Shown piece after piece: positions 2,642 through 59,816 of a stretch of 64,000 bases of DNA (position 1 is its first letter; the number at the start of each line of letters is the position of its first letter). The notes beneath the pieces were generated by a model that made no database searches, was not told where the DNA came from, and worked only from the letters and a program-made list of their open reading frames with translations. The DNA comes from Macrostomum lignano (lineage: Eukaryota): NCBI GenBank assembly GCA_002269645.1, contig NIVC01000851.1, forward strand, positions 126,846 through 190,845. The letters are read 5' to 3'. The translations under genes were made by a program, and so were the position numbers.

Positions 2642-2680
2642 TGGCCCTGGGCTCTAGCCAGAAATTGCATTTAATACAGT

Positions 2681-20100: not shown

Positions 20101-22621
20101 CCAGCCCGTGTCGTTCCTGTGCGCCATCACCATGAAGTTGCCCCAGCCGCAGAACTGGTTGGCCATGTCGTCGTTGCCGAAAGAGAATGAATAGCCGGCT
20201 AGCCAATAGGAGAAGCCACCGAACACCACGTCCGCAACGTTCTTCACCATAATGTTGACCTCGTTTTTGGCCGTGCACGAGCCGGACTCAAGCAGACCAA
20301 ATCCTAGTGGAGTTCATAGGGTACAGGTTGTAGTTCGATGCACGTTGAACATGCATGGTCAAGTCGTGCATGATGGTAATTTGTACAAATTGGTTGGCCG
20401 CATTACTGTACTCGTAACTCTGCGTTCTACGCTTCCCAACAGCCAACACTAAACGTTTGAGAGATCAATACGTCTCACCGCTTTGCATCGTGAAAATGCT
20501 GAATGTTGACGATAATATCCATATAGCGTCACTTTGCAGCTCCCGAACAAGTGGCGCCTGAGTTGCTGTCGAGGACATGTTTTCACGGAGCCTTTGCTTC
20601 GTCTTTCTTGGCTGCTCTAGAAAATTTCTCGCTAGACTGGGCAACAAACCCCTACACCTGTATATTTCCGTTTCCTTCTTTCTTGTTTTGTTTCCAGGCT
20701 GATTGGCTCGGAGTGATCAACAAACGTCTCATCTTACACTATCACCTGTTGCCAGGTGCAGTCTTGGGTATAGTCTTTTGCATCATCCCCTTTCATCCCA
20801 CTTTGGTGCAGTCGAAATCTTTCTCTTCATACTTCACAATGACAAAATTATTCATTTCCCCAGAGGTATCTCGCTCTTAGCTCTCGATCTTATCCCTTTG
20901 CTGATGCAGTTGTTATTTGTGGTGCTTTTGAAGACTTTCATTTTGGGCAAAGGTTTAAAACCAAAAGTAAACCACAGATTACTACTAAGTCAAAATGAAA
21001 AAGGAAAGATTTGGGAGTATTTGGGAGTAGGATCGTAGCTATTGGATATTTGATGAGAATTTCACAGCTTAATGAATCCTAGTTATCAGGTCTGCAGAAG
21101 TTATTTCTTTAAATATCGATCGTTATGGGTAGGGTATTTGTTTTGAAACGCGATTGAAACCGCAGATTCATCTATATTAGTTAGATGTCAATCCAGCATT
21201 CCAGGTTAGGGCCACTGACACCAGCCGTCGCTGGTAGTGCTTGAGAGGAGCAGAAGCTATAGGACCATGGTCTGAACCCCTGGGTTTTCGCGCTGCAACC
21301 AGGAATATAAAATCTGTGATTGAATCGCTCTAAATTTATCCGCCGTCACTATAGACACTCGTGCGCTTGATGCAGAATTCTTGGAAAGACCATGACCACT
21401 CTCATTGAGCTCTTGGCGTAGATATTTGACTGTTAAGGCAAGAAGACGTCGAAAAAAGACAGAATTAGAGGAAGCTATATACTGTAGATGACTGTGCAGC
21501 AAGTCCTAATAGGGGTTGGGTTGGGAATTATTAATAACACAAGTTAGAGCAGTATACTGAAGCGTCTTATCAGTATTGGATACTGATGTGTCCTATGCAC
21601 TGATTATAACATTTTTGTATGCGTGTAGTATGAAATAATGGCAAGAGGAAATTTGACAGACAGAGTGTAAAATCTCCATCGTGAATAATCACACTCGGGA
21701 AGTTTGTCTTATGAAAATAGCTAGCTGCGTGATTGTGATATGATGTCATGATATCCGGGGCTTTTTGTGTTTTTATATAGCAGAACATATTCATGTCTTT
21801 ATACTCTCGCAAATTAAGTAATTTTAGTATGCGTTAAGATTATCGTAAATAACAAAACGAAACAAAAATACACCTCTAAAAAGTCTTACCCCTCTATCAA
21901 TAGGGTTTTTTGGTAAGTGGACGAAAGTAAGAATACCACAAAATGAAAAGATCCTATATATTATCCATATTTCAGAAGTTGGTGTTTAGTATATTCTGAC
22001 TAGCAATCTGCGCCCCCCCCCCCCAACGAGGGGGCAACAAAGAAAGGGATAATAAATTTTAATTAAAAATTCTGAATTTCCATTAGGCTTTTAAATATCC
22101 AAAATTTCCCTTAGTAATATTGTTCATTTTCAACTTCCAGCTTTACTTTTGCTTGCGTTAGTGCCTATAAAAATAATTAGACACGAACCGCTCTGCATTG
22201 TGAAGATGATGAAGGCCGAGGTCAGCACCCAGATTGCGTCAGCTTCGCCGCTAATTCCAGCCTTGTACATTGGCGAATAATAGTGCAGATTGTGGGGGTC
22301 GCTTTCATCGTTTCCGGCTTCTGTTAAGGCACCGGCGGCTGCGCCTTGAAGTGACATATCGAGCTGGGAAGAGTGGTTGTTGCTGTTGTCGTTGTTGTAC
22401 ACTGCTGTCACGACGATGCTAGACCAGTTCCGACCGGCTGGGCTCTTGTCTGAATGCGCGCAAAATGAAGCTATGCGGTCGACTTTTTCCAGACCCGTCT
22501 CTCTTCCCCTCAAGCCTCCCGCATCATCATTTCTTCCCAATCTGACTGCCCGGTAAAGCGGATTCGTGCAAAAAATTGAGCTGGAGAGGCAGACAGTAAA
22601 AGGAACTGCAGAAGCCGCCAA
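17184..22621 (-). CDS. amt: Ammonium transporter (Amt family) with two alternative first coding exons
   Basis: Exon 1a is 22621-22189 and exon 1b is 20578-20479. Common exons are 20303-19760, 19289-19218, 18707-18571, 18467-18354, 18261-18140 and 18071-17184. All junctions are GT-AG and in phase (769 or 658 aa). Motifs: TMQSGFGLLESG, KNEVNIMVKN, GAMAER, DIAGAGPVH, WLGFNCGS, IDDPVG, AVH. Confidence 0.95.
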
Positions 22622-24905: not shown

Positions 24906-27900
24906 TTATTCAACAATTTCCACTGATCGGCTGGTGGTCTGGCCGCCGGCAGTTCCGCCGCCTCTAGGGTAGTTTGTCATCCAGGATGTCAGTCGCTCCT
25001 TCACATTCATGTGGCCTCCGAGAATGTCGGCGGGAGTGGACTGCAGCTTCACGGACGTGTTGCAGAACACCTGTGCAGAAGGATGGTTTTGGAGTTGAAA
25101 CAGTTATTAGCATGAAGATGCAGCATGAAGCACCGCGAGCAAGCAGCGGTCACTATGAAGTTCGGCGAAGTCATTGGCTCTGAACTCAATGAGAGTAACA
25201 ATAAGATACACCCAGGTACAAAGCTTTAGGCTTTATCGACCCATAAATCAGCGCTGAATCCTAAGCAAATACAAGCGCTCCAATACCGTACGCAAGGGGG
25301 GCCGTAGCCCAGCGGTAGCGCAGCTGCTCTGGTGTGCCAGCGACCCAGGCTCGATTCCAAGTGCAGTCACATTAATTTGGGGCTGAATTGGAATCTCGGC
25401 TTGGCTCTGCTCGTGCAATTAACGGCCTTGAGAGCCAACCCCCAAGGCGCAGTGAAGTGTACATGCCTAACGATAATATAAAGTTAGGGCCGCTGTACAC
25501 TCCTGCGTGAGTGTGTGCCTGCGTACGTATCCGCGCGCTTGTATGCCTGCTCAGGGGAGTCGGCGGAATGGGCAGTAATGCCTCTCGCCGGTTGTGTGCC
25601 TATGTCGCTTAAAGTGCGCTAGGGTGCACACAGCCCCCCTGCCTCTAATAAAAAAAATACTGTACGCAGGCACGAGCTCACACAGGGTGTACAGCGGCCA
25701 TGACTTTCCAATCGTCAGGCATGTACTCTCTCTGTGCCTTGTGGGTTGGGCCTCATGACTGTGAATCGCACTTACGATCGCACCCCAATTACGTGCACAC
25801 AGGCCCCAAATTAATCTTGAGAGGGGGTGAAAATAATCCAAATCTATCCAGAGGGAATCGTAAATCAAATAAGTAATTAAAAATATAGATGTTTTAACGC
25901 TAGGAATGCTGAGTTAGTGCTTAAAAACTATCACTTTCCATCTCGCTATTGAATTCTGTAGCGAAAATCGCACGATTGTCACGACCTTCTTTCTACCTTT
26001 GTTGTCGATGGTTATTCTATTAAGTTCACAGTTTAAGTTTTAACTGCTATACTGCTATGCCTTCCAACTTACCGTAGCCTGCAGGTTGACCAGCTCGGTG
26101 CTGTGGAAGGCTGCCCCGTCCTGCTGTAGCGGCACAATGCGAGACGCTTCAATCGATGCTAGCTGGCGTGTTTTTGCCTCGCGCAGCTTTGAGTAGTCCG
26201 AGGTTCGCGCTACAAAATCGCTGAAGTCATTAATCGCCTTCTCCTTCTGGCGGTGGTCCTCGCGAAGCTCCGAGTACAGCGCCTGCTCTTCCGAGACTTC
26301 CTGATCCCGCTTGGCGTCCATGAGCTCCGACTGGGTCTTGGCAACCAGAAGTGTCTCCTGCTCCGTGCACTTGTTGATCCAGTCCAGTGCCTCCCGGTCT
26401 GGTGTGACAGGCCGCACCTGCTCCAGCTCCAGCTCCCGCTGCACCTCGTCCCACACCTCGCCAAGCTTGTAGTCCAGGTAGCGCTCGATCAGCGTCAGAG
26501 TCACGTGATCTTCAGCATTGATGCCCGGCAGGTCGACAAAGCCGATCCGGTAGAACAGAGCATAGATCTTGGCGCGCACGTTCTCGGCGACTTCAACGAT
26601 CGATCGGCTTGGCCAGTTGGCCGGCTGCGGCGTCACCGGCTGCTTGCGCTGGTCGTCGCCCATCAGTGGAGACAGCAGGTCACCGATGGAGCCGTCTGGC
26701 CGGCGCGGACAACCAATGCTGGCTTCGGTGTCGCGCCACAACGCGCAGAACAGATGCGGAGCCGTCACCTCGCAGCCGCCTTTCCAGGTCTTCAAGTGCG
26801 GCAGAGTTTTCTCGTTCTCGCTGAGATCGAGAAGCACGCCAAGAATGAGGCTGTGCAAATCCGACGGGCAACGTTCCAGCAAGTCCAGCAGCAGATACAC
26901 GCCCTCTCGTTCAAGGAAGCAGTCCTCCGTGGTGTAAGAGCCGACCACGCAGCACCATACAGCGTCGATGGCACCAATAACGAGCTGGTAGTGACCAAGA
27001 CCAGAGCTCAGAAGCCCCGGGTCCGTGCGCAGGAACTGCACTAGGGTAGCTACACCAGACGGGCCGAACAGGTCTTTATTGTGCAGACTGTTCTCGCAGA
27101 GACCGCTGAGGATGCCCAGCATCTCGCGCTTCATCTCCAAGTCGATGGTGTCGTCGTCATTCACTGCGGCTGTTGCAGCTTGTCCGGTTCGGTTCCCGGC
27201 CGACACAGAAGAGGCCAGAATCTCGCTTAGGGCACCGATAGCATCTTGGTCAACAAAGTCGGCCAGGATGTCCGGGTTGTTGGTGGTCACCATCGCCGAG
27301 ATCGCTCGCAAGGTGCGCCGCATCTGGGCCCGCTTGCTGCCGCGGCCACCTGCGCCGTGGAAGGCGTTGCCGTAGCCGAGATAGTCGTCGCTGGCCTCCG
27401 TGCACCAGAAGAGCAATTCCAGGAGCCGGTTGCAGCCGTTGCAGCTGACGAAGTCAGCTTGCATCTTCGGTCCCACGGTAGCAAGGGCGGACAAAGCCAG
27501 CAGCTGCAGCTCCTCAACGTAGGCCGGCGGCAGCTCTCTCGGTTTGCTTGTTGGCTCATTCGGCTTCACATAGGAGAGCAGAGCCAGCATGAAGTGGCCT
27601 TCAGACAGAACAGGCAGGGCACAGGGATCGCTGGATAGGCTGACGAGCGTGCTTATGAGCAGCTTCTTGAGTTCAAAATCCTCGTGGTTCTTCGACAGTT
27701 TCAGGTTCCTGACCAGTGGGCTGTGACTCTTGACCTCCTCGAAGGTTGCGAACAGAGTCAACTGCTTGAGAAAGCCGACCTCGATGAACGGCGCCCTACA
27801 GTCGGTAGCGGCCAGGAGTTGCACCAACACCAGAACGTCGTTCCTTAACTGACGGTCGAACACGGAAAATGTCCTTGGCAGCAGATAGACAAAAGCCTCG

Positions 27901-28916
27901 CGCAGTTGAGCGACGCACTCCTGACAGGCAAGCTGCTTGGCAACTTGCTCAGAATCGCCATGCTGCATCAGGTTCCAGAGGATCTCAACCGAGCGGAACA
28001 GCAGTTCACCGGACGGATCCGGGTCTGTCATACGGCTGCACAGAGTGTAGGCGGCGTTGACGCTGAGCATCTGGATGCAGCAGCGGGTAGAGTTACCCGA
28101 CAGCTTCTGTAGCAAACTGATGACCGCCAGGCGAACTGTCAGGTCTTTGTCCAAAAGCTTAAGGGTTCGAACCAGCGTCTCAGAGATGTCGCTCTCCTCA
28201 CAGATGGCCTGGTTGTATCTGGGGAGTTAGAAAGAATAGGAACAGGTATATAAACTATTACTTACGCTCGTACAATCATACTAGTAGCCATACCGCTCAA
28301 TAAAGCATTCCCAAACTACTCACTTTCTCCCAGCTGGTTTGTGATCCCTGACGTCTTGTGGCGGCGGCTCGCCGTCGTAGATCTGCGCCAGCGTCCGACA
28401 AATCTGCAGTCGGACTCGGCTGACGTCGACGCGCATGAGAAAAGCGAGCTGAGATGCCGTCTCTACGCTGATCTGACGGTAAGCGAGCTCGTCTGATGCC
28501 TTCTCCATGAGGAAGGGCAGCGCGCAGACGCACAGACAGTCAACCAGGGGCTCCACGTAGCAGACCAGACCCTCCTCGATGCGATCTGCGCAGATGTTAA
28601 GAATTCGTCGCACCTGCACAAGGTCCTTCATAAGGAAGCCCTGCTTGTAGTGGCGCAGAAGACGTTCAATTGCCATCACGTGCCGGTCATACAGACCTGC
28701 GTAGTGCGGATCCGTGAGCACCTTGAGCACGCGTTCCAGGTCAACTGTTTGCAGCTTCTCACCGACAACATTGCCAATGTCCTCGTCACTGATGATGTGC
28801 GTAACTATGGGGATTTTCTGGTTCTCCAGCTTCTGTGAGATTTCAGTCAGAGAAAGGCCACCAGGAGGCAGAGACGATGACCCTCCACCAGCGAAGGCTT
28901 GGGTCTTTGTTGCCAT
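24906..28916 (-). CDS. CFAP69: Cilia- and flagella-associated protein 69
   Basis: Exons 28916-28324, 28218-26073 and 25070-24906, GT-AG and in phase, 967 aa. Motifs match recalled CFAP69: DPDPSGELLFRSVEILWNL, DRQLRND, EDFELKKLL, GNAFHGAGGRG, ENVRAKIY, RYLDYKLGEVW, QSTPA. Confidence 0.93.
25296..25657 (+). mobile_element. tRNA-derived SINE, copy 1 (in CFAP69 intron 2, antisense)
   Basis: A box TAGCCCAGCGG and B box GGCTCGATTCC in a tRNA-like head, with an A-rich tail. TSD TAC(C/T)GTACGCA at 25284-25294 and 25658-25668. Nearly identical to the copy at 38802-39158. Confidence 0.9.
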
Positions 28917-30707
28917 ATCAGGAACAGTCAAAGCATTAAAAAATATTAGTTTGTCAGTATTTTTAGAAACTGCATTTTAGTGAGCAAAAATAACATGTTT
29001 AGATATTTATTGGTAAGATACATGTTGCATAAGACCTAAAGCTCTTAAAATTTAATTATATATACTTTATAATACATAGTTATTTTTATTACATGGTCAC
29101 TGTATGCCAAGGAACTATTGTATAAAAAGAAGCTTCTCTGTTTAACAAAAGTCTTTTTAATCATGCATATTTATTTTGATAAATGGATGCTTTGTATAGA
29201 TGGACTTCTAACTATAAATAAAGTATTTTAATCTGAATGAAAATCTTTATCTGAATAAAAAAAGCTGAAAATTTTATAAACACTAATTGTTTATGTTAAG
29301 AACAAATATAAAAATGTGCATTAAGTAAACATTGTTGTGGAATGAATCATAAATAAAATAAACATATTTCCTTATCTGGTAACGAGCTATAAATAAAAAT
29401 AAAAATACTGCGGTGCATATTTCTGCTTTGAACATCTTCGGCTTCTTATTTATTGCTAAATATTTCAATGCGTTGCTTGACTCGTGCTAGTATGAATCAT
29501 TGTGTTAGCAACACAATAAATTTATATTAATTTGGTGCTATTTCAGTTTTTTTATCTTTATGAACACTAAAAAACAGCATTTCAACACTGTGTTTAGATA
29601 TATATAAAGTAGTTTCTTTTAATCCATAGAATACGGAAAAAATATCCAAGTAACAATTACTTCTACTGCACAAGCTGTTCAAACTAACTGTTCGATATAT
29701 TTAATCCAACAGAATAAAATCGGGTTTTAAGCTATAATTAGAAATAACTAGACATAAAACAACTTATTGGAGTGAGACTAAAAGATTACAATATCAACAA
29801 ACAAACTTAGAAAAAGCATCGTGAAGCTAAAGTATTTTTACTGTTTTATAAAAAGACAGTATTTTACAAGTTAAATTTTTGTTTAGCGACAGATAATATT
29901 AAAAACCTATTTAACAGAAAAGTATAAAAATGCAACATTTTCATTTTGCATAACTAAAAAAAGTTTAAATGTTTTGTATCTTTCTCCAGTTTCAATTGTT
30001 CCTACTTTTGCCCAATAGTTTTGTTATAATGTTACTAACTTTTTAAAATCGTCATGCTAGTTGGGCCAAGCGTGAACTCTCAGCTACAGTAGAAAGGGAG
30101 TGAATCCTACATAATACTAAAAATGATTTGTCTCTCATTGAGGTAGGTATGTGTATGATCTGCAGCCTCACTGATTCTGTCCTGGAATGAAAAAGGCACA
30201 TATGAAAGCCAAATTTACTGGGTTCATCGTACCTTATTCGATGCGTTTGTTCTTAGCAATTTGTCTAAATGACGACGAAAAACTTCGTAGAGTATTTTAT
30301 TCGTTTTATAGATTTAAATAAAATCTAAATGCATCAAATAAGTAGCTTTATTGTACTAATGAGTTAACTTCATAAAACCTGAATGATTCGTAGCGTTTGT
30401 CTTACAGCCATTAAACGATACATCATGATGCACGTTAAACCAAGCGCTTCGGTTTAATTTCGAAAGTTCCTCAGCTTAAAAAAGGTTTAAGCTGAGGTCT
30501 TAGTGTGACGAATAAGGCGAATAAGACGAATTTGTGTAGCGGTTAATTTAGATAGTTCACGATTAGTTAGCAGATCGGCAAGCCGCTTCAACCCTTAGAC
30601 TTTTGCTAGTGTTACTTAAAATTGCTGGATCAGTTATAATTAACTAATTGGTGGGCCAAGGTAGACGGCGGAAGAGTTGGTGTAAGGAGGCCAGACAGCG
30701 TCACAGC

Positions 30708-32924: not shown

Positions 32925-33487
<563 letters not shown>

Positions 33488-34190
33488 ACACGCAGACACT
33501 GGGCCTTGAATAATTGAAAAAAACTTTCAAATTACACTGCAAGTAGTCCTTGGACATCCGCATGCATTAAGATTTAATTGTCTGGCAATCAGTTGGGACG
33601 AAAAATATTAGAATTTTCTGGGAGAAGCGGAGGAAAGCAACCGATTAACCAATCCAAATGTGACGAAGCAGCCTCGGGGAAGAATAAGTTTTTCGAGCAG
33701 GACAAAAATAGCCGCTTGAGCTTGGGTGCCGCAACGATTTGCTGAGGTGGAGCGGTTTATCTCCAGAGAAAAATGCTTTTCTGCTAGACACGGTGGGACA
33801 GAAGCCAGCTCAAAGGCGCGCAGTAAACTGGTGCCTACTTGGCAAGCAATTTCCCCAATTTGTCGGAATTCTTTCAATACGTCGCTCAGAAAATTGTTTT
33901 TCTGACGAGCAAACTCGCTGCAGCTGTCGAAAGGCAGAAAAACAAAAACGCTTTTTCAGTTTTATGTTAAAGAAAAATGAATAGCCGATTCCAGACTTGA
34001 ACAGCTGCTGCAGTCTCTAAGTGCCCAAAATTCTGCCGAACCGAAAGAAAAATAGATGAAAAACACTTACGAGTATTGCATGCAAGACTGGGCGAGTTCT
34101 AACGTTGCTTTACTTCTCGGGCATACTAGACCGACCACATTGATGTCAGTCAATCAAGTGGTTCGTTTAGGGTAGCAGTGAATCATCTTG

Positions 34191-34757
34191 ATTGGCGCCC
34201 TAATCTCCTTGGTTGGCGCCCCAATCTCCTTGGTTGGCGCCCCAATCTCCTTGGTTGGCGCCCCAATCTCCTTGGTTGGCGCCCCAATCTCCTTGGTTGG
34301 CGCCCCAATCTCCTTGGTTGGCGCCCCAATCTCCTTGGTTGGCGCCCCAATCTCCTTGGTTGGCGCCCCAATCTCCTTGGTTGGCGCCCCAATCTCCTTG
34401 GTTGGCGCCCCAATCTCCTTGGTTGGCGCCCCAGTCTCCTTGGTTGGCGCCCCAATCTCCTTGGTTGGCGCCCCAATCTCCTTGGTTGGCGCCCCAATCT
34501 CCTTGGTTGGCGCCCCAGTCTCCTTGGTTGGCGCCCCAATCTCCTTGGTTGGCGCCCCAATCTCCTTGGTTGGCGCCCCAATCTCCTTGGTTGGCGCCCC
34601 AGTCTCCTTGGTTGGCGCCCCAATCTCCTTGGTTGGCGCCCCAATCTCCTTGGTTGGCGCCCCAATCTCCTAGATTGGCGCCCTAATCTCCTTGGTTGGC
34701 GCCCCAATCTCCTTGGTTGGCGCCCCAATCTCCTTGGTTGGCGCCCCAATCTCCTTG
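34191..34757. repeat. 21-bp minisatellite (TTGGCGCCCCAATCTCCTTGG), ~27 copies
   Basis: Near-identical head-to-tail units with no spacers. Confidence 0.95.
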
Positions 34758-34881
34758 GTGGGCACCCCTGTCTCTTGTTGGGCACAAAGCTGGGCACATC
34801 TCACTAGAAACCTTGTATAACCTTAGCCAAACTTGACCACCAGAAAGCACCGATGTGATTAAATTCTTCACAAACTCTTAA

Positions 34882-35529
34882 GCAAACTCCGGCCTGAGGG
34901 TCACATGCGGCCCGCAAAGATTATCTATCCGGCCCTCGGGTCCTTTGAAATTTCACAATAGCAATCCGGCCCGCTCAGGGTTTGTGTCTTCTCTTCTCAC
35001 TTTTCCTCTCCCTTCATCTCTCCTCTCCTCTCTCCTCTCTTATCTCATCTCCTCTCTTATCTCCTCTCCTCTCTTATCTTCTCTCTCATCGCATTTTTCA
35101 CCTCTCCTCCCACCCTTCATCTCTCCTCTCATCTCTTCTTTCCTCTCTCCTCTCCTCTCTCCTCTCCTCTCTCATCTCTTCTCTCATCGCATTTCTCATC
35201 TCGCCTCCCACCTCTCCTCTCTCCTCTCCTCTCTCCTGTCCTCTCTCCTCTCCTCTCTCTCCTCTCTCATCTCATCCCTCTCTTCTCTTCTCTTATCTCT
35301 CTCCTCTCTTTTCTCTCCTCTCCTCTCCATCCTATCCTTTCCTCTGGCCTCTCATCTCTTTCCTCTCCTCTCCTCTTTTATCTCTTTTTATTTTCGCTCT
35401 CATCTCTTCTCATCTCTTATATCCTCTCTCCTCTTCTCTCCTTTTCCCTCTTCCTCTCCGGCCACAGCAATGATCTAGCTCGTAGATTCTCTATCTGGTC
35501 TCTGAGGTGAAAAAGTTTGCCGACCCCTG
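34882..35529. mobile_element. hAT/Charlie-type MITE with an expanded CT-rich interior (left TIR truncated)
   Basis: Right end AGTTTGCCGACCCCTG is the reverse complement of a CAGGGGTCGGCAAACT Charlie-type TIR, and the left end begins GCAAACTCCGGCC. CT-rich simple sequence spans ~34990-35455. A second family member lies at 49086. Confidence 0.7.
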
Positions 35530-35975
35530 TCTTAAAATTAAATCAACAGTCTTACAAACTTGAGTGTGAGTCAAAATATAAAAAATATAAAATATAAAAT
35601 ACGAGTCAAAATAGTACTCTGCAGTGTAGATTGCAAACAACAAACAACAACAGCAAACATCAAAACAGAGATAGAAGTTTGGTCTACTTAATCGGACAGT
35701 TTTTCGAGTCGGCCAGCCTCGGTGGCACAATTGAGCAGCAGGGAAACGTTTCTCTGATTTTGTTGATTCTCAATCGCCGTATTTTCTGCATCTGCAGCAA
35801 GAGAATTGCCGCCTGTAAGCCAATTTTGTCCATAATTGAGCTTCATCGAGAGCAAATTAGCAAAATGATTGCAGCTGGAAAATTTGGCACTCTTCTCCAT
35901 CCTCGTGCTTCCCACCCCCCTACTAATTAAGCAATTTAGCGCCAGCTGGTGCCAAGCCTGTCTGGCTGTCGAGTC

Positions 35976-35982
35976 TATAAAA
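35976..35982 (+). promoter_or_regulatory. TATA box upstream of the secreted-peptide gene
   Basis: TATAAAA about 80 nt upstream of the ATG at 36058. Confidence 0.5.
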
Positions 35983-36057
35983 GCCGGCTTCGAGCGGCAG
36001 AGTCAGGACCGCAACCAGAGCTGACTGCAGAAACAATTTGGAAAACAGAAGAAGAGC

Positions 36058-36453
36058 ATGGCAGCCAAGCAAAAACTGAGCATTGCGCAGCTTCTGCTGC
36101 TATTCCTGACTGTCGCTGCTGCTGTCTATGCCGCTTCGGCCCATCCTTGCCGCGGCAGAAGCCCCGTTGAAGACCCCGACGAGACAGACTTGAAGCATCC
36201 TGCCAACAAAGGTAAGCTGAATCCACTTTCTCACGCTATCAGTTCATTAATGCAGCCAGTAAGCAGCTTATTAATGAACTCCAACCCGGTTGAATATCCC
36301 GCAGACTCCGACGTCGAGGCCGGAGACGAACTGGTGAAGAAGCGCTCCTACATTCCACTGTTCAACTATCTGAAGTTTGCCCTCAAGCACGAGCGATCTG
36401 GCCGCTCGCCGGACCCGCCCCGGCGCTGGCACTGGCTCTGGCAGAGGCGTTAA
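36058..36453 (+). CDS. Secreted prepropeptide (neuropeptide/peptide-hormone precursor-like), 131 aa
   Basis: Hydrophobic signal peptide (~residues 1-28), acidic spacer, KKR, an 18-mer followed by G-R (amidation signal), and an RR-flanked WHWLWQ. Upstream TATA box and downstream AATAAA. Confidence 0.75.
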   Translation: MAAKQKLSIAQLLLLFLTVAAAVYAASAHPCRGRSPVEDPDETDLKHPANKGKLNPLSHAISSLMQPVSSLLMNSNPVEYPADSDVEAGDELVKKRSYIPLFNYLKFALKHERSGRSPDPPRRWHWLWQRR

Positions 36454-37349
36454 TTCAGCAACATCTGCCAGCAAATTCAGCAAATTCAGCGTTAATTTAG
36501 CATGAAGCAACAACAACAACATCTACTGATGACAAAAAATAAACGCAAACCTTTAATATTACTGGCTGCGCGCTCAATTTCAACTGAGGATTTTGCTGCC
36601 TCTGTAGTCGCGCAAGGACAACAACCTATTAGAATAAATATACTACGAGCTAATATGCTAAATCTTCATGTCATAAGCTTGAAAACATTGCATTGCTTTT
36701 CTCTTATTCATTTGACTGCTAAGGTTACTTAATATAGCTTTTTGCAAGCCATTTGATATTATGAGCAAGCAATTTAATAATCAGTGAGAAAACCTAGTGC
36801 TAAAAGATAGATTTTTCAGTACTTTATGGTCCAAACCATGGGCTTTGGAGCATCCAATTTAATAATCCGAGCACTCAGTTAGTCATTTCCAGTGTCACTA
36901 ATATCGCATTTTAACACTGTATTAGGGGAGACAGCAATAATGCACAAACAGTTTGAAAAGGAAAACAGAGCAACTGAATCTACAGCTGATATGGCAGAAA
37001 ATTAGCAAACGCAGGTCTCAAGCAGGCAAGTGAAATGTCATTTGAAATAGCTAAGTATCAGTAATGAGTTTTAGAATTGCTTCACCTGTGATGCAGCGGG
37101 AACGAAGCGAAGCATAGTGGCTAAACCATTCACAATTTTGCCTATACAGTTTTGCAGCTTCACCTTCATCCATCGTGAAATGTGGACAGTGCTGTCTCCC
37201 CTTTCAATTGCACTCACAATCAGCTTGTACTTTTCGTTGCACATTCTTCTATCATGTTGAATGCGCGCATCTATTTGCAGCAAATGCGAAACCGTTCCTT
37301 CTCGTTCACTCGTGCGTGAAGGACATCGTGCACTGCATTTCTCAAGTAT

Positions 37350-37466
37350 GGATGCTTCAGTGCTTGAGTCGGATGCTTCAGTGCTTGAGTCGGATGCTTC
37401 ATTGCCTGAGTCGGATGTTTCAGTGCTTGAGTCGGATGCACCAGTGTCTGAGTTGGATCAGTGGCT
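37350..37466 (-). repeat. Short array of 21-bp monomers, inverted relative to the 37727-38675 array
   Basis: GGATGCTTCAGTGCTTGAGTC-like units, ~5 copies. Confidence 0.85.
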
Positions 37467-37726
37467 CAGTATTTCGGCATAATCCTCACGTGGCTATGTA
37501 AAATAATTTCTGCGGCGTAAGAAAAGAAAATTGTCGTTCTTTTGGTAATTTTAATGAGCATTTGTAGCTCAATCCACTGATTGCTGCGGCCGGGGCCCCC
37601 TATATAGCTCAATATAGCTAATATTACATTCCTTGATTTCGTACATAGAAAAAAATTTAGGTAGCGTTATTTTGGGATTTCTTACCGGTAGGAGTACTGA
37701 ATTTCATGGCTTTAGGAGACCTTCGG

Positions 37727-38675
37727 TCCAACTCAAGCATCCGACTCAGGCACTGATGCATCCGAATCAGACACTAGTGAATCCGACTCAGGCACTGATG
37801 CATCCGAATCAGACACTAGTGTATCCGACTCAGGCACTGATGCATCCGAATCAGACACTAGTGTATCCGACTCAGGCACTGATGCATCCGAATCAGACAC
37901 TAGTGTATCCGACTCAGGCACTGATGCATCCGAATCAGACACTAGTGTATCCGACTCAGGCACTGATGCATCCGAATCAGACACTAGTGTATCCGACTCA
38001 GGCACTGATGCATCCGAATCAGACACTAGTGTATCCGACTCAGGCACTGATGCATCCGAATCAGACACTAGTGTATCCGACTCAGGCACTGATGCATCCG
38101 AATCAGACACTAGTGTATCCGACTCAGGCACTGATGCATCCGAATCAGACACTAGTGTATCCGACTCAGGCACTGATGCATCCGAATCAGACACTAGTGT
38201 ATCCGACTCAGGCACTGATGCATCCGAATCAGACACTAGTGTATCCGACTCAGGCACTGATGCATCCGAATCAGACACTAGTGTATCCGACTCAGGCACT
38301 GATGCATCCGAATCAGACACTAGTGTATCCGACTCAGGCACTGATGCATCCGAATCAGACACTAGTGTATCCGACTCAGGCACTGATGCATCCGAATCAG
38401 ACACTAGTGTATCCGACTCAGGCACTGATGCATCCGAATCAGACACTAGTGTATCCGACTCAGGCACTGATGCATCCGAATCAGACACTAGTGTATCCGA
38501 CTCAGGCACTGATGCATCCGAATCAGACACTAGTGTATCCGACTCAGGCACTGATGCATCCGAATCAGACACTAGTGTATCCGACTCAGGCACTGATGCA
38601 TCCGAATCAGACACTAGTGTATCCGACTCAGGCACTGATGCATCCAACTCAAGCACTGAAGCATCCGACTCAGAC
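37727..38675 (+). repeat. 42-bp minisatellite (dimer of two related 21-mers), ~22 copies
   Basis: Unit ATCCGACTCAGGCACTGATGC + ATCCGAATCAGACACTAGTGT. Confidence 0.95.
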
Positions 38676-38801
38676 ATAAAGGCACTGAGGCACAGATTTT
38701 GCCCCATTCCTTTCGGTACGAATATGGTACTAAAAAAGTGGAAAATAATATAAAAATTAAATAGATACGCCACAGATAACTAGAGGATAAATACGAGCGT
38801 A

Positions 38802-39214: not shown

Positions 39215-41244
39215 TCACATTTTTGAACCTGACAGCTTAGCAATTTTGCGCTTCTGTCGCCCAGAATTCGACTGCACTGTGTTGGTCATCTCCTTGACGA
39301 ATTTCTTCGCAAAGAAGTGGAAAAGCCGACGAACGATGTGGCTCCGCAGATCGTGGCCGGATGTGCACATGCTGATGCCAAACACCAGGTGCATGTGCTC
39401 CTCGTTGAAAGTGCAGCGATCAATGATCTTGCTGAACAGGGAGCGCTGGCAAGACGATCGCAAAAACTGCTTCTTAAGATTACAGTCGGCCCAAATCTCC
39501 TGAAAGACTTTCCAACAATGAGCTGCCAGATTAAAAACAAACTCCGATGGCTTCACCAGGCCGCCCCTGTCAATGCTGTCCTGGAACGTTGATGAACACA
39601 AGCTGGAATCGTCAGTCGCCGATTGAACGTTTTCAAAGTCAGTGAGAAATTCAGAGCAAGATTTGCACCTCGTAGATCAAATAGTTGATCGAGCGGCATA
39701 ACCACTTACGAAAAAAGATGATGTTTTTTTTCATAAACTGATGGCTCATGATCAAGCTTCAGTGCAGCTGCAATGGCATCGGCGGTCGAATTCAGCTCGG
39801 ACAGCGCTTTCTATATCTGTCAGGCTGATGTTTGAGTACTTAAAGAGGGAGACGGCCCGATTTTTTTTATCGCTTTCTAAAATCTGCCGCATCGATACAT
39901 AATAGTTTGCACCAGAGAGTTGACGCAACCACCCGAATCTAGACTCCAGGGCGTCGGATTGGAGATGACCAAGAAGTACGAAGTTGAATCCGGCGTGATC
40001 GAGCAGATATGAAGCACAATCGGAAAGAGACAAACACGCTTGGCGTAAAGCTAGAAATGTTTCTTTTGACAGTCCCAAGCGACCATTGGCTTCCCAGCGT
40101 TGAAGGAAATCCGCGAATTTTCTCAGATGTTTCAGCTTCCAATCTTGCGTTGATGTAATAGGATCCATGGCGCAATCACGCTGGGAAGTTGGAATCAATG
40201 CTTCCCTTTTGTAGATGATTTCACGTTAAAAATTTTCCACAACTCCTCTATCATAGAAATGAAAAGCGCAGTTTCATGCACGTTCGATATTCTTTGGATT
40301 AAGAACAGAAGGCGATAACTTATGAGCTTTTTTGAGTGGAGCGGACGCTTCTAACTGATATAGTTGCGTGATGTGATGAAAACTGGCTCGGCAACCATTC
40401 GGTAAATCTGGTTCAAAACTTGGGCAATGAAGCTTTGCGCGTTTGAAAATTGTTGTATACATTTTTTAAGTCGTGCACGGGATCAAAATTAGAAATATTG
40501 GCTGTTCCGTAATGGAGTCGTAAATTTTTGTCGTCAGAGTTCCACCGCAAAGGCTGTTCACAAAAAATTCTGTTAACGGACGCATTATCTACGGAAATTC
40601 CTATGCATTCCAAACCAACTTTTCGAACAGTTGTCGTGACGTCATTGTAACAAAGATACTGCTTCTCAACTGTCAGAGTAGCTACTGGGAAAATAGCAAC
40701 CAGGTCTTTGAATCTATTGACTAATGATTTAACCATGAAACAGAGTAGAGTTGATGCCACTGACCCTGCGGCTGTCAGCCCATGCACTTCACCATTGCTA
40801 TATTCGACGCGTTTTGCAATATCATCAATGATAAGTAGACATTTCCTTTCGAAGGCATTTAGCTTTGAGACACGAAGACTACGCAGTGTTGTCTAACCCA
40901 GTGTTGCTTTGAACCTGTCATGTGACCTGAAGTGTCTTAATTGATGGTAGGCACAAAACATTCTCTTGAAGTAAAACTTTGTAGGCAGCGGAACTGGATG
41001 CGTGAATTAGATATGCAAATATTATTAGCTCGGGTGAATAGTTTCTGCTGTATTTCTTCTTCGCAGCTAGCCTTGGTAGGATTGAAAAACATTTCTCAAT
41101 AGGAGGGGTCCGAGGACAAAATGAGAGGAAAACGCGTTTGTTTCTTAGGCCACCTCTGGTACAGCCAGCTGCCTTTTTCAACACAGCCTTCCCGTCCAGT
41201 TTATTATCTAGAAGTCCTTGGTTAGAGTCAGATACCTGCCTCAA
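39215..41244 (-). pseudogene. Decayed P-element/THAP9-type transposase
   Basis: Fragments in order: YKVLLQENVLCLPSIKTL, GISVDNASVN, FDPVHDLKNVYNNF, ASFHHITQLY...AHKL...LNPKNIE, LQSDALESRFGWLRQLSGAN, C..GH...KRKIAKL. These match recalled P-element transposase motifs. Multiple frameshifts and deletions. Confidence 0.85.
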
Positions 41245-46210: not shown

Positions 46211-47155
46211 AGAGGGACAGTAAATAACAGAATCAGGGAGACAGTGACAGTAAGTTACAGAATCAGGGAGACAGTGACAGTAAGTTACAGAATCAGGGAG
46301 ACAGTGACAGTAAGTTACAGAATCAGGGAGACAGTGACAGTAAGTTACAGAATCAGGGAGACAGTGACAGTAAGTTACAGAATCAGGGAGACAGTGACAG
46401 TAAGTTACAGAATCAGGGAGACAGTGACAGTAAGTTACAGAATCAGGGAGACGGTGACAGTAAGTTACAGAATCAGGGAGACAGTGACAGAAAGTTACAG
46501 AATCAGGGAGACAGTGACAGTAAGTTACAGAATCAGGGAGACAGTGACAGTAAGTTACAGAATCAGGGAGACAGTGACAGTAAGTTACAGAATCAGGGAG
46601 ACAGTGACAGTAAGTTACAGAATCAGGGAGACAGTGACAGTAAGTTACAGAATCAGGGAGACAGTGACAGTAAGTTACAGAATCAGGGAGACAGTGACAG
46701 TAAGTTACAGAATCAGGGAGACAGTGACAGTAAGTTACAGAATCAGGGAGACAGTGACAGTAAGTTACAGAATCAGGGAGACAGTGACAGTAAGTTACAG
46801 AATCAGGGAGACAGTGACAGTAAGTTACAGAATCAGGGAGGGTGGCAGTAAGTTACAGAATCAGGGAGACAGTGACAGTAAGTTACAGAATCAGGGAGAC
46901 AGTGACAGTAAGTTACAGAATCAGGGAGACAGTGACAGTAAGTTACAGAATCAGGGAGACAGTGACAGTAAGTTACAGAATCAGGGAGACAGTGACAGTA
47001 AGTTACGGAATCAGGGAGACAGTGACAGTAAGTTACAGAATCAGGGAGACAGTGACAGTAAGTTACAGAATCAGGGAGACAGTGACAGTAAGTTACAGAA
47101 TCAGGGAGACAGTGACAGTAAGTTACAGAATCAGGGAGAGGATGACAGTAAACTA
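46211..47155. repeat. 30-bp minisatellite, ~31 copies, between the divergent PanK-like and iGluR genes
   Basis: Unit AATCAGGGAGACAGTGACAGTAAGTTACAG, with a one-base register slip near 46841. Confidence 0.95.
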
Positions 47156-47580
47156 CATGATTTAAGAGAGGCTGGACAGCATTTCAAAACATTTGCTTGA
47201 GCACATAAAAATCCGAATCAGCTCGGTGAATGTCAGGTTTACAACCCGAGTTGAGTGTCCGGAAGCGGCGGCTTGCTTTTGCAACTGCACTGAGACTCTG
47301 AGAAACACTGTAGACCCAATTTTTAATGACTTCTCCTTTAAGGGATAAAAATTGCGTGCCAAATGGGCGCAAAATCTCTCCCCTTACTCGTTCTATTGGA
47401 TGACTCAAGCGCCCTGGCAACACTCTCGGGATCAGGGAGGCAAAAAGAGGCCCGGAGGCGACAGGAAACTGGCTTTAAACCAAGAAAATGCTCAAAATTT
47501 TGTCCCAACCTCAGTTGGTGAGCTCATAGTCTCCATTGGGGTTCCCAGTTCCCCAGATTTCAACAGAAGTTTTTCACCCG

Positions 47581-50500
47581 ATGCAACAGCTGACCCTTGC
47601 CTTGATAGTTTCTGTCGCCACCGCAGCAGCAGGAGCAGCAGTGGCGGCGCCAGCAGGTTCCAGATTTCCGATCTACTTCTTCTACGACAGCTCGGCTCCG
47701 CCAGGCACCGAGATTGTCTTCAGGCGCGTCGCTGCCGACGTCGCATCGAGCGTCGGAGTCGTCGAAGTCGTCCCGTTGGAGCCTAACATCAGTCAAAGCG
47801 GCTACAGCATGCTCTCCAGGCTCTGCTCAGCCACCAGAGCCGGTGCCGCGGCCCTGTTTGCCTCAGTATGTCCGGAGGCTGACCGCCTCATCGCCAGCTG
47901 GGCCAGAGCGCACGACATGCTCTACATCGCCTGGCGGCAGGCTTTTCCCGACTTGCCGGGCACCAGGCTCAGCCCGCTACCCGAATTGGCGCCGGCGTTT
48001 GAGAGCCTCCTGGCCTACCTCAACTGGACGGATTTCTCCTACGTCTACGCTGACGACGCCGGCTTCCGTCGGGGTGTTCGCCTCGCTGAGGCGCTACGGC
48101 GTCGGAAGCGACAGGACGAGGCCGACAGCGCCGGATTTGGCAGCGCCGGGGAGAGTATCGATTTTCGACGGGTGGCGCCGGCCGCCGGGCCATCGCTTAC
48201 GTTCTCGGCCACGGCCGGCCGGATCTCAACCCGCCGTCGCACGATGTTCTGGCGATGCAATCAGCTCTGACCGCCCTGGCGGAGGCCGCTAATTCGGTCG
48301 GCTTGGCAACAAGCGACGATCATGTCGTCAGCAGAACAACTGTCCTGACCTGGCCAGACCTGTCCTGCCCCGGAGGCGACGTCGGTTTAGTAGTTGGTCG
48401 GCGAAAAATCCGGGGCGACGGCAGCCAGCGACGTCACAGTCTTGAACGTCGAGAGCTTCGCCACCGCCTGCACCAAGCCGTTGCCTCGAGGCTTTCAAGC
48501 AGCGGCTCCGATACCATCCGCGTGATGGACCTGATGGGCGCGCCGCACCGCTCCCAACCAATTGGAGTCTGGACCCCTGCCGGCGGCCTCAACATCACCA
48601 ACGACCGGCACCGAAGGCGGTCCGGCGCTAGCGGCGCAAACGACACAGCAGATGCGAGCCTCAGGCTCGGCAATGGCACCGTGATCCGGGTGGTCAGCAT
48701 CCTCAACGAGCCGTTTGTCATGTTGCGCGAGGGCAGCGAGAACGCCTCGGATTTCAGGCAGCGCTATCACGGATTCTGCATTGACTTGGCCGAGATGGTC
48801 TTCGCCAAGCTGGGTGTCGACTGGCAGCTGCACCTGGTTGAGGACGGAAAGTACGGCGCCCAGGAGCCCAGCCCCGATGGCAGCGGGGAGCTCGAGTGGA
48901 ACGGAATGATGGGTGAGGCGGTGAGATCGCTATGATTGGGAGATCTGGAATCATCACAATGACAGTACGAACTCTGGAACTGCATTCAAAGTGGGAGTAC
49001 CTGAAGTCTGAGGAATAGCTAAATACTTACCTGAGATTTAAGACACCTGAAGACTGAAGTTGTACAGCGGGGATACGTCGTAGGACAGGAGTCGGCAAAC
49101 TCCGGCCTGCGGAGCCTCTCTATCCGGCTCCCGGGTCCTTTGAAACTTTACAACAGCAACCCGGCCCGCTCAAGGTTTGCGTCTCTTCTTAACTTTCTCT
49201 CTTCTCTCCTCTCTCTTTTCTCTCATCTGGCCTGCAGCCATGAGCTGGATTCACTATGTCGGAGGATAACTGAAGATGGAGGAGAGGAATATTTTTGAAA
49301 CTTAAGGTCGGAGTAAGCATACGAGAGATCTCTACTCTCGTATATATCTAGGACTGCTGGGTTCGGAGTAAAGGGATATCTGAGGTGAGAGTAGAGAATT
49401 CAGGAAGTCAGGGTGCAAAGTTGACGAGGCCAGTTACTTGTCAAAAAGCTATTCTACGCATTATAAAATTTTAATTTCTTTTCTGCTCAATCTGAAGCTT
49501 CAGGTGTTTGAAATTCAATCGGGAACAGTAATAACTGCAGTTAAATCAGCGGCCCCAGATTCAGACAGCTGGGCTGATGAGGCCAATCAGAAAAATGTCA
49601 ACTGTTTTTCTTTCAATCAAAGCCAAGAAATACGATTGGGAGTTACAATCGGTCGGTGCAAAAAGCGGGGATGATCAAACGGAGATGCTGGGGGTGGAGG
49701 AAACTGTTGGATCAGTTCAGAATAGGGGAGTAAATTCGCCAGGCAGTGGAAACCCTCCCTGATTTCTCATGGGGCCTGGAAAGGCAAGGTCAGGTTGGGG
49801 GTGAATGAGTTGGCTTAAGCAAATTTTGTGACGAGGAGTCCACGCACGTACGTCGTACAGAAGAAGCCTGGCAAGTCATATGGGACTGGCCGGGGACCAC
49901 TGAAACGGAGCATTCCGGACTGGAAGAATCGGGCATGGAAGTACCCCTTCTATCCAATGTTACACTCAAGAGCTGAGCTCTACACAATCTTTTTTCCCTC
50001 TACTGAAAATCCCTCTGTATTTGACGCCTTTCAAATATTTCGAATGCTCGCAATTTCCAGTTTTGCTTCCAGTCTATCTGGCTCTATCTCCCGGGAGTCC
50101 ACGGACTGGGGAAATGGCGTGCCCTCCCCCCCCGCGAGCAATATTCGAATTGCTACTTGAGAGCGCACAATTTCATAAGTGGACAGAAAAGTGCAGACGA
50201 CGTTTGACTGGAAATTTTTTCTTTTTTCTCCTTTAAAAGGCCGCCTCCAACAACGACATGTGACAGCCAATATGACAGCGTCAGATGGCGATGGAGTGCG
50301 TTGAGTTGAAGAGAAGAATTTCTGGGGAAGAAAAACAGGGAGAGAGACCATCGAGAAAGCCTCGAATCATTCGGTTTTTGCAATATACGAACTAGTTTCT
50401 ATCAGGGGTATTACTGCAGCCAGAATCCTTCTAGGTATCCAATCCACAAAAGAACGAGGTGACAGATGGCATGTCAATCAGTAATGTATCGAAGACTCAC

Positions 50501-59111: not shown

Positions 59112-59510
59112 TTCTTCAAAAGGACTCTTCAAAATTTTGTTCGATTGAGTAGTCAACTCAATCTCAAACAACTCCGACTTTGTTTGAAGCCATAGCACAG
59201 GGTTCGAATCTTTCCTGAAACTCGAATAATCAAAAGTGGGTCTGCCGAGGAAAGTGCTAAGGTGAGACATGTCACAGTGCTATAGAGTATTCCCTTTAAG
59301 ATCCTGCAGCTTACTTTGTACCCCTCTCCCTCTCTCTCTCTCTCTCTCTCTCTGTTCTAGCTTTAACAGGGCAAATTAAATTAGAACTAACAAATAGGAA
59401 AGTTTGTCACAAAAAAGATAAGTAGAGCTGTGTCGGCTTCCTTGCACCAGAAAGCCGCCATTTCCATCTTCCTATCGATACTTTTAGACTGTTTGAAGTT
59501 AGGGAACTGT

Positions 59511-59816
<306 letters not shown>

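What the first reader, a model, noticed from the sequence alone, without database searches (positions are those of the whole stretch)
36058..36453. Unassigned neuropeptide-like precursor: an amidated 18-mer plus a Trp-rich hexapeptide
The architecture is signal peptide, spacer, KKR, SYIPLFNYLKFALKHERS-G-R (36346-36405, predicted 18-aa amide), SPDPP, RR, WHWLWQ, RR, stop. The TATA box and poly(A) signal support a real compact gene. I cannot place either peptide in a known family. The 18-mer has the length of PDF and a weak L.N.L...K pattern, but lacks other PDF residues. A dibasic-flanked WHWLWQ with three tryptophans is unusual. Inference: this is a novel signalling peptide (neuropeptide or pheromone) precursor.
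Basis: partly seen in the sequence, partly recalled or inferred. Interest (0 to 1): 0.7.

Follow-up and report, generated by a model that had tools for sequence, protein, structure and literature searches.

The report
Orphan flatworm secreted-peptide precursor gene
A tiny two-exon gene of the flatworm Macrostomum lignano encodes a 100-residue secreted protein built like a peptide-hormone precursor, but it has no detectable relatives and no expression or peptide data, so it remains an unproven candidate.

Summary
The ORF, its motifs, the TATA box and the poly(A) signal are all at the stated coordinates. The window is not from an insect. It is the last 64 kb of Macrostomum lignano scaffold NIVC01000851.1. 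A UniProt model (A0A1I8HCB4, truncated at 74 aa) uses exactly this splice. Codon and GC3 statistics support coding exons and a non-coding intron. All three subgenome copies keep the ORF, splice sites, TATA box, AATAAA and every basic site. Exon 2, which encodes both peptides, is identical in all three, but the copies are only 1.8-2.4% diverged, so this test has little power. No homologue was found in 1.84 billion representative proteins, Pfam (including PDH), PDB chains, metagenomes or the searchable literature. The gene meets the operational prohormone criteria used for planarians, apart from cDNA verification. The number of dibasic sites is not above chance (P=0.29), the 18-mer is not amphipathic, and a competing KHER site could prevent amidation. 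The best reading is an unassigned prohormone-like precursor (about 0.45). Rivals are a host-defence peptide, a seminal-fluid peptide, or a young ORF that is never processed. Interest is modest.

The parts
35976..35983 (+). TATA box TATAAAAG, 82 nt upstream of the ATG
   Evidence: Unchanged in all three subgenome copies.
36058..36211 (+). Exon 1 coding part: start codon, signal peptide and the first part of the acidic propiece (...HPANK plus the first base of the Asp codon)
   Evidence: L002 differs at 36127 (Y24H) and 36168 (synonymous).
36058..36132 (+). Predicted signal peptide MAAKQKLSIAQLLLLFLTVAAAVYA. The n-region carries +2 and the h-region Kyte-Doolittle mean reaches 3.0. Cleavage is possible after A25, S27 or A28.
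   Evidence: Hydropathy; helix 9-28 in the AF2 model. This is a heuristic; SignalP was not available.
36212..36304 (+). 93-nt GT-AG intron, in frame and stop-free. It contains an 11-bp inverted repeat (36241-36251 / 36270-36280).
   Evidence: The splice is used by UniProt model P0001. GC 0.44, GC3 0.45, negative coding score. Chance of being open and a multiple of three is about 0.07.
36305..36453 (+). Exon 2 coding part: the rest of the acidic propiece, all predicted peptides and the stop codon
   Evidence: Identical (0 of 149 differences) in all three subgenome copies.
36337..36345 (+). KKR tribasic cleavage site
36346..36399 (+). 18-mer SYIPLFNYLKFALKHERS. Predicted [M+H]+ is 2225.223 if amidated.
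   Evidence: AF2 helix 70-81. Not amphipathic: muH 0.26, P=0.39.
36400..36405 (+). Gly-Arg: amide donor plus a monobasic site in an R-S-G-R (RxxR) context. It overlaps a competing K-H-E-R site.
   Evidence: The processing rules come from established knowledge and were not computed.
36406..36426 (+). Linker SPDPP followed by the RR dibasic site
36427..36444 (+). Trp-rich hexapeptide WHWLWQ ([M+H]+ 955.457)
   Evidence: Trp clustering P=0.006. AF2 helix 92-98.
36445..36453 (+). C-terminal RR and the TAA stop
36538..36543 (+). Poly(A) signal AATAAA, 85 nt after the stop
   Evidence: Unchanged in the three copies.

Best explanation
A two-exon, TATA-driven gene of Macrostomum lignano, present once in each of the three subgenomes, encodes a 100-aa preproprotein that works as a prohormone-type precursor.

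Shown by the sequence: an N-terminal signal peptide (about residues 1-25); a disordered, strongly acidic propiece (residues 26-62, net -6); and a basic C-terminal third holding KKR, an 18-mer, G-R, SPDPP, RR, WHWLWQ and RR-stop.

Inferred mechanism: ER import and signal-peptide removal, then sorting to regulated secretory granules. A PC2/PC1-type convertase would cleave after KKR65 and after R85 (R-S-G-R), and possibly after RR92. A carboxypeptidase would trim the basic residues. Peptidylglycine alpha-amidating monooxygenase would convert Gly84 into a C-terminal amide. The products would be SYIPLFNYLKFALKHERS-NH2 and either WHWLWQ or the uncleaved SPDPPRRWHWLWQ. The peptides would act on a receptor, probably a GPCR, as a neuropeptide or peptide hormone.

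The family is unassigned and, as far as can be searched, restricted to this lineage.
For: Gene reality. TATA box, start context and AATAAA are present. The canonical 93-nt intron is used by an independent UniProt model. The spliced CDS scores best of six frames and has GC3 0.69 against 0.75 in neighbouring genes, whereas the intron has GC3 0.45. All three subgenome copies keep the ORF, splice sites, TATA box, AATAAA and all basic sites. There are 2 differences in 303 CDS nt against L002, where CFAP69 exons show 0.8% and intergenic DNA 3.1%; exon 2 is identical in all copies.

Precursor architecture. The signal-like N-terminus is rare among ORFs in this window (4 of 154). AF2 predicts no globular fold, only a signal helix and two short helices lying exactly over the two predicted peptides. 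Charges are segregated (P=0.018).

Published criteria. The gene meets the operational criteria used for planarian prohormones: a signal sequence, basic sites flanking the peptides, fewer than 200 aa, and no similarity to genes annotated otherwise (PMC2953531).
Against: There is no expression, peptidomic or receptor evidence, and the GenBank annotation of this scaffold calls no gene here. That annotation also misses the obvious ammonium-transporter gene, so the absence is weak evidence.

The number of dibasic pairs (P=0.29) and of G[KR] (P=0.10) is what the composition predicts. Only a single peptide copy is encoded, with no repeated motif. K-H-E-R|S competes with R-S-G-R|S, and cleavage there gives a non-amidated 16-mer. 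Trp at P1' of RR|W is, as I recall the classical surveys of dibasic sites, disfavoured.

The CDS coding score is only in the top 9% of stop-free stretches of 100 codons drawn from the non-genic parts of the window. Lower divergence in the CDS than in the flanks is not significant (about P=0.1, my arithmetic). No ortholog could be examined.
Confidence: 0.45

Rival explanations
1. Exocrine host-defence (antimicrobial) or toxin-like peptide precursor. An acidic propiece neutralises a cationic C-terminal peptide that is released after KKR. The Trp/Arg-rich tail RRWHWLWQRR inserts into microbial membranes in the way Trp/Arg-rich antimicrobial peptides do.
For: The layout is signal peptide, anionic propiece (net -6), KKR, then a cationic 35-mer (net +6), with charge segregation at P=0.018. 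The tail PPRRWHWLWQR has the highest hydrophobic moment in the protein (0.60). [quoted passage not shown] The Trp cluster is non-random (P=0.006). Orphan status and a lineage-restricted distribution are typical of effector peptides.
Against: The 18-mer is not an amphipathic helix (muH 0.26, P=0.39). If the terminal RR is trimmed, the tail has a net charge of only about +1. There is no Pfam or PDB similarity to any antimicrobial peptide family. There is no multigene family or tandem array, which effector peptides often form.
Confidence: 0.18
2. Reproductive secreted peptide: a seminal-fluid (prostate) or other copulatory-gland product that acts on the mating partner. This is the 'pheromone/allohormone' half of the reader's inference, but exocrine rather than neuronal.
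For: M. lignano has a documented pool of such genes: 76 prostate-limited transcripts, of which 31 had no BLAST hit and 38 of 65 carry a signal peptide (PMC5977470). Planarian prohormone genes are also expressed in copulatory organs and glands (PMC2953531). The small, orphan, secreted profile fits.
Against: Neither peptide strings nor coding DNA strings of this gene occur in the supplementary files held for the prostate screen. Nothing in the sequence points specifically to reproduction.
Confidence: 0.12
3. A young, lineage-specific ORF or transcript with no processed bioactive peptide. It may be translated but functionless, or not translated at all, and the prohormone look is a by-product of a basic-rich composition and a CTG/GCT-rich 5' end that happens to encode a hydrophobic leader.
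For: No homologue exists anywhere. The basic-site count is at chance level. The coding score is positive but modest (0.13 against 0.28-0.46 for neighbouring exons; 9% of stop-free stretches from the non-genic parts of the window score as high). Lower CDS divergence between subgenome copies is not significant, and the intron is equally conserved. The only protein model on record is truncated, and GenBank calls no gene here.
Against: A TATA box, a good start context, a canonical intron with an exon/intron GC3 contrast, and a poly(A) signal at the right distances are together unlikely for noise. The ORF is intact in three copies, with only one conservative change in the signal peptide. A gene predictor independently spliced it.
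Confidence: 0.2

Closest known systems
Flatworm neuropeptide/peptide-hormone prohormones (Schmidtea mediterranea spp/npp genes, Collins et al. 2010, PMC2953531; the npp families of McVeigh 2009 and Koziol 2016)
   Same: A small (under 200 aa) secreted precursor with a signal peptide, an acidic spacer, basic cleavage sites flanking short peptides and a Gly amide donor. Like many of these families it is taxon-restricted, with no homologue outside the lineage.
   Different: No sequence similarity to any of them was detectable. It carries a single copy of each peptide. There is no cDNA, mass-spectrometry or in situ evidence. The two catalogues that included M. lignano (McVeigh 2009, Koziol 2016) could not be read, so prior description under an npp number is not fully excluded.
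Pigment-dispersing factor/hormone (PDF/PDH, Pfam PF06324) and the protostome cerebrin/PDF group
   Same: An 18-residue amidated peptide near the C-terminus of a small precursor, preceded by a spacer and a basic site. There is a loose L-[FI]-N-x-L...K spacing.
   Different: No Pfam hit even at E<=10. The register is shifted by one residue. The conserved N-terminal NSE/L and C-terminal residues are missing. A C-terminal extension with a second peptide is not part of PDF precursors.
Trp/Arg-rich antimicrobial peptides (lactoferricin core RRWQWR; also indolicidin and tritrpticin, named from memory)
   Same: RRWHWLWQRR alternates Trp with other residues and is flanked by Arg pairs. The precursor has an anionic propiece ahead of a cationic C-terminus.
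   Different: There is no homology. The flanking Arg pairs are also standard convertase sites whose use would strip the charge. The activity is untested.
M. lignano prostate-limited secreted transcripts (Mlig-pro1-76, PMC5977470)
   Same: Same species, and many of them are small, signal-peptide-bearing and without BLAST hits.
   Different: No link to any Mlig-pro transcript was found. The expression site of this gene is unknown.

Membership tests
Prohormone (operational definition of Collins et al. 2010, PMC2953531) | N-terminal secretory signal sequence | tested here: met
   The n-region MAAKQK carries +2. The 17-residue h-region has a Kyte-Doolittle mean up to 3.0. Small residues sit at -3/-1 (AVYA|A, AAS|A, ASA|H). 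AF2 predicts a helix at 9-28. Only 4 of 154 ORFs pass the same crude filter. This is a heuristic; SignalP was not run.
Prohormone (operational definition of Collins et al. 2010, PMC2953531) | Basic cleavage sites flanking predicted or mass-spectrometry-confirmed peptides | tested here: met
   KKR, R-S-G-R, RR and RR-stop flank the two peptides. However, the number of basic pairs is at chance level for this composition (P=0.29).
Prohormone (operational definition of Collins et al. 2010, PMC2953531) | Fewer than 200 aa and no similarity to genes annotated as something else | tested here: met
   The product is 100 aa. There are no hits in 1.84e9 representative proteins, Pfam or PDB.
Prohormone (operational definition of Collins et al. 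2010, PMC2953531) | Gene model verified by cDNA; peptides detected or dependent on pc2 | not testable with these tools
   Only a computational UniProt model with the same splice exists. No M. lignano transcript data are in the searchable collections: the CFAP69 control shows no Macrostomum hits from run assemblies.
PDF/PDH (Pfam PF06324) | Match to the PDH profile, that is, the conserved 18-residue NSELINSxLGxPKxxxxA-amide core | tested here: not met
   No Pfam family was reported for the precursor, the proprotein or the 38-aa C-terminus at E<=10.
MIP/allatostatin-B (W-x6-W-amide) and WWamide peptides | C-terminal Trp followed by a Gly amide donor; W-x6-W spacing | tested here: not met
   WHWLWQ is followed by RR-stop with no Gly, and the Trp spacing is W-x-W-x-W.
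Trp/Arg-rich cationic antimicrobial peptides | Short, cationic, Trp- and Arg-rich segment | tested here: met
   RRWHWLWQRR has 3 Trp and 4 Arg in 10 residues. The muH of PPRRWHWLWQR is 0.60. Compare RRWQWR in PMC2937036. This is a resemblance in composition only.
Trp/Arg-rich cationic antimicrobial peptides | Antimicrobial or membrane activity; expression in a barrier or immune tissue | not testable with these tools
   This needs synthesis and assay, and expression data.
Alpha-helical amphipathic antimicrobial peptides (dermaseptin-type precursors) | The mature peptide forms a strongly amphipathic helix | tested here: not met
   The 18-mer has muH 0.26, and 39% of shuffles score as high.

The most novel reading that the evidence does not exclude
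A Macrostomum-restricted, possibly de novo-born signalling-peptide family. A single small gene per subgenome would yield an 18-residue ...KHERS-amide and an unusual Trp-rich hexapeptide (WHWLWQ), acting as a new neuropeptide or mating allohormone with its own receptor.
Probability: 0.3. Interest if true: 0.5.

Novelty: new member of a known kind. Interest (0 to 1): 0.3.

Why it matters
If the peptides are real, this would add an unassigned signalling-peptide family to a transgenic flatworm model whose neuropeptidome is poorly charted. It would also give a concrete ligand for GPCR deorphanisation and an example of a lineage-restricted prohormone. Orphan candidate prohormones are common in flatworms, though, so a specialist would not be surprised. 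The practical results here are that this small gene is not called in the GenBank annotation of the scaffold as held here, that the UniProt model is truncated, and that exact masses and the splice junction are now available for testing.

Tried and rejected
1. Insect origin. My first impression from the sequence was wrong. P0001 and the CFAP69 control show M. lignano scaffold NIVC01000851.1.

2. Homology. All of the following were negative apart from the truncated self-hit:
- word-indexed search of 5.8e9 proteins
- full phmmer against 1.84e9 representatives
- Pfam at E<=10 on three versions of the protein
- PDB sequences
- metagenome loci

3. Exact look-ups of the 131-aa, 100-aa and 74-aa products found no contigs.

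4. Literature. Peptide strings, hexamer fragments and the UniProt accession gave 0 papers. A table of S. mansoni npp peptides held nothing similar. McVeigh 2009, Koziol 2016 and McVeigh 2012 are not held. The supplements of the prostate screen held no match.

5. No second copy or paralogue lies in the window. The locus has no repeat or TE structure beyond the flanking minisatellites. There is no Rfam family on either strand in 33-40 kb.

6. The bacterial promoter/terminator scan is irrelevant for a eukaryote.

7. The amphipathic-helix reading of the 18-mer was rejected.

8. Purifying selection could not be shown across the subgenome copies. The direction is right but the test is underpowered: 2 differences observed against about 5.3 expected.

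9. Fold search was not run, because the single-sequence model (pLDDT 63, mostly disordered) would give meaningless matches.

Full report
**What is there.** TATAAAAG sits at 35976, 82 nt before the ATG. The start context is AAGAGCATGG, and an in-frame TGA at 36022 closes the frame upstream. AATAAA follows at 36538, 85 nt after the stop.

**Organism and locus.** The only database hit is UniProt A0A1I8HCB4 of the flatworm Macrostomum lignano: 74 aa, 100% identical, uncharacterised. As a control, the neighbouring large ORF 26055-28154(-) is CFAP69. It is 100% identical to GenBank PAA75987.1 (BOX15_Mlig017060g2). The fetched slice of scaffold NIVC01000851.1 (assembly GCA_002269645.1, Mlig_3_7) is base-for-base identical to window 14906-38904. 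The window is therefore the last 64 kb of that 190,845-bp scaffold.

The gene lies in unique sequence between minisatellites, about 7 kb upstream of CFAP69. An ammonium-transporter gene lies at 17-22 kb, an ionotropic glutamate receptor gene at 47.5-53.4 kb and a LINE element at 1-6.4 kb. The GenBank annotation, as held in the collection, calls no gene at the peptide locus. It does not call the obvious ammonium-transporter gene either, so that absence says little.

**Correction to the anatomy.** 36212-36304 begins GTAAG and ends CGCAG, is 93 nt long, and is in frame and free of stops. That is why the unspliced reading survived; the chance of this is about 0.07. The UniProt model joins ...HPANK|DSDVEAGDELVKKR... 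at exactly this junction.

Composition agrees with a real intron. Exon GC is 0.57 and 0.62 against 0.44 for the intron. CDS GC3 is 0.69, close to the 0.75 of neighbouring genes, against 0.45 for the intron read in frame. The codon log-likelihood is +0.13 for the spliced CDS, the best of six frames, against -0.24 for the intron. The product is therefore 100 aa:

MAAKQKLSIAQLLLLFLTVAAAVYA / ASAHPCRGRSPVEDPDETDLKHPANKDSDVEAGDELV / KKR / SYIPLFNYLKFALKHERS / GR / SPDPP / RR / WHWLWQ / RR

**Is it a real gene?** Beyond these signals, M. lignano is a neopolyploid with three subgenomes. SNP divergence in this assembly is 1.91% between L1 and L2 and 2.41% between L and S (PMC10733133). The two other CFAP69 copies (PAA57176.1 and PAA80538.1) led to two paralogous loci, L002 and L003. 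Both carry the peptide gene at the same relative position. Overall divergence from the window is 2.4% for L002 and 1.8% for L003, as expected for subgenome copies.

All three copies keep the ATG, the ORF, both splice sites, the TATA box, AATAAA and every basic site. L003 is identical throughout the CDS. L002 has one change in the signal peptide (Y24H), one synonymous change and one intron change. Exon 2, which encodes all the predicted peptides, is identical in all three.

Against L002 the CDS differs at 2 of 303 positions (0.66%). CFAP69 exons differ at 0.8%, the immediate flanks at 1.2-2.6% and intergenic DNA at 3.1%. The direction fits constraint. With about 5.3 differences expected, however, the deficit is not significant (P about 0.1, my arithmetic), and the intron is just as conserved. 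I conclude that the gene is very probably real, but selection on the peptides has not been demonstrated.

**Is the architecture more than chance?** The evidence is mixed:
- A crude signal-peptide filter passes only 4 of 154 ATG ORFs of at least 50 aa in the window.
- The Trp cluster is non-random (P=0.006).
- Separation of an acidic propiece (net -6) from a basic C-terminal 35-mer (net +6) is unusual (P=0.018).
- The post-signal protein is 20% Lys/Arg. Four adjacent basic pairs (P=0.29) and two G[KR] (P=0.10) are what shuffling gives.
- A single-sequence AlphaFold model (pLDDT 63) shows no globular fold. It has a signal helix (9-28), a long disordered region and two short helices (70-81 and 92-98) lying on the two predicted peptides.

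**Processing, inferred from established convertase rules, not computed.** KKR65 is a strong site. R85 has Arg at P4 (R-S-G-R), so cleavage there, followed by carboxypeptidase trimming and amidation, would give SYIPLFNYLKFALKHERS-NH2.

R82 has Lys at P4 (K-H-E-R). It is a competing site that would give a non-amidated 16-mer. RR92 is followed by Trp, which as I recall is a disfavoured P1' residue, so SPDPPRRWHWLWQ may stay intact. R-G-R34 in the propiece fits no classical motif. Expected masses are listed.

**Comparison with what is known.** No relative was found:
- the word-indexed 5.8-billion protein set
- a full phmmer scan of 1.84 billion representatives
- Pfam at E<=10 for the precursor, the proprotein and the C-terminal 38-mer, which tests and fails the PDH/PDF suggestion
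- PDB chains
- JGI metagenomes
- full-text literature, for the peptide strings or the accession

A table of Schistosoma npp peptides shows nothing similar.

Two caveats apply. The CFAP69 control returned no Macrostomum sequence other than the M. lignano entries from GenBank and UniProt. Congeners are therefore simply not in the searchable data, and "orphan" means "no relative outside the genus". The two catalogues that mined M. lignano for neuropeptides (McVeigh 2009, Koziol 2016) are not held.

The gene does meet the operational prohormone definition used for planarians: a signal sequence, basic sites flanking the peptides, fewer than 200 aa, and no other annotation. cDNA verification is the exception (PMC2953531). 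The same paper shows that such genes are also expressed in the pharynx, glands, intestine, testes and copulatory organs.

**Rivals.**
- (a) Host-defence peptide. The anionic propiece and cationic C-terminus, together with the tail RRWHWLWQRR, recall the lactoferricin core RRWQWR (PMC2937036). Against this, the 18-mer is not amphipathic (muH 0.26, P=0.39), and trimming would remove most of the tail's charge.
- (b) Seminal-fluid or copulatory-gland peptide. M. lignano has 76 prostate-limited transcripts, of which 31 have no BLAST hit and 38 of 65 carry signal peptides (PMC5977470). No link to this gene was found.
- (c) A young ORF that is never processed. This is supported by the chance-level site counts, the modest coding score (9% of stop-free stretches from the non-genic parts of the window score as high) and the lack of any ortholog. 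It is opposed by the full set of gene signals and three intact copies.

**Verdict.** This is a plausible, unassigned prohormone-like precursor (about 0.45), but neuropeptide function, amidation and release of WHWLWQ are all inferences. It would be a new member of a known kind, a taxon-restricted flatworm peptide precursor. Interest is modest (0.3) until expression, orthologs or peptidomics are checked.

Noticed in passing
window 1-64000 (= NIVC01000851.1 positions 126846-190845): The window is the terminal 64 kb of Macrostomum lignano Mlig_3_7 scaffold NIVC01000851.1.
   Followed up: yes
L002 2233-2625(-) and L003 3578-3970(-): Two further copies of the peptide gene lie about 7 kb upstream of the other two CFAP69 copies (scaffolds NIVC01002522.1 and NIVC01000575.1). 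They match the three-subgenome (S/L1/L2) organisation. Around the peptide gene (35480-37350) L003 is nearly identical to the window (4 substitutions), although the two loci differ by 1.8% overall. This mosaic pattern could reflect gene conversion or assembly chimerism.
   Followed up: partly
window 36212-36304: The 93-nt intron is in frame and stop-free in all three copies, so a retained-intron mRNA would still encode both peptides, with 31 extra residues in the propiece. It contains an 11-bp perfect inverted repeat: AGTTCATTAAT (36241-36251) and ATTAATGAACT (36270-36280).
   Followed up: partly
window 36142-36165 and 36388-36411: The motif H-x-x-x-G-R-S-P occurs twice in the protein (HPCRGRSP just after the signal peptide, HERSGRSP after the 18-mer), with no similarity at the DNA level. 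If the first G-R were also used it would give a short Cys-containing amide (ASAHPCR-NH2, [M+H]+ 740.36), but it fits no classical cleavage motif.
   Followed up: no
window 63846-64000 (+): A second signal-peptide-like ORF with clustered basic sites (MRCQLLVLQLPLLLLLTSACTAATFTNAEPPSSRRTKRSRRALGS...) runs off the end of the scaffold. It may be another secreted or prohormone-like gene.
   Followed up: no
window 17184-22621 (-): Ammonium-transporter exons (Pfam PF00909, E=1.6e-41) are not among the genes called for this stretch of the GenBank record as held in the collection. The deposited annotation is therefore incomplete here.
   Followed up: partly
window 24906-28931 (-): This is the CFAP69 gene (PF21049, E=4.8e-251), present in three copies at 90% identity or more in the genome. 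UniProt entry A0A1I8FUL0 (94% identical) is named 'Protein kinase domain-containing protein', probably a fused or mis-named model.
   Followed up: no
window 1079-6408 (+): A LINE-type retrotransposon with an apurinic-type endonuclease (2681-3649), a reverse transcriptase (3559-5616) and an RNase H (5713-6408), split over frames.
   Followed up: partly
window 47536-53399 (+): Exons of an ionotropic glutamate receptor gene (Lig_chan-Glu_bd, Lig_chan and a weak ANF_receptor match).
   Followed up: partly
window 32940-33563, 34178-34807, 34945-35478, 37350-37458, 37633-38773, 46244-47200, 59430-59903, 61674-62417: There are many long minisatellite arrays (for example 21-nt units at 34.2-34.8 kb and 37.35-37.46 kb). 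They produce long spurious ORFs in several frames, and two of them bracket the peptide gene.
   Followed up: no
window 39215-40198 (-): Two adjacent ORFs on the minus strand have no significant Pfam match. From memory they look like the C-terminal part of a THAP9/P-element-type transposase, which would make this a probable degraded DNA transposon 3 kb downstream of the peptide gene.
   Followed up: no
P0001 (UniProt A0A1I8HCB4): The only protein model on record for this gene stops at ...PLFNYL (74 aa), in the middle of the 18-mer. All three Mlig_3_7 copies read through, so the truncation probably reflects the older ML2 assembly (a contig end or an indel error) rather than biology.
   Followed up: partly
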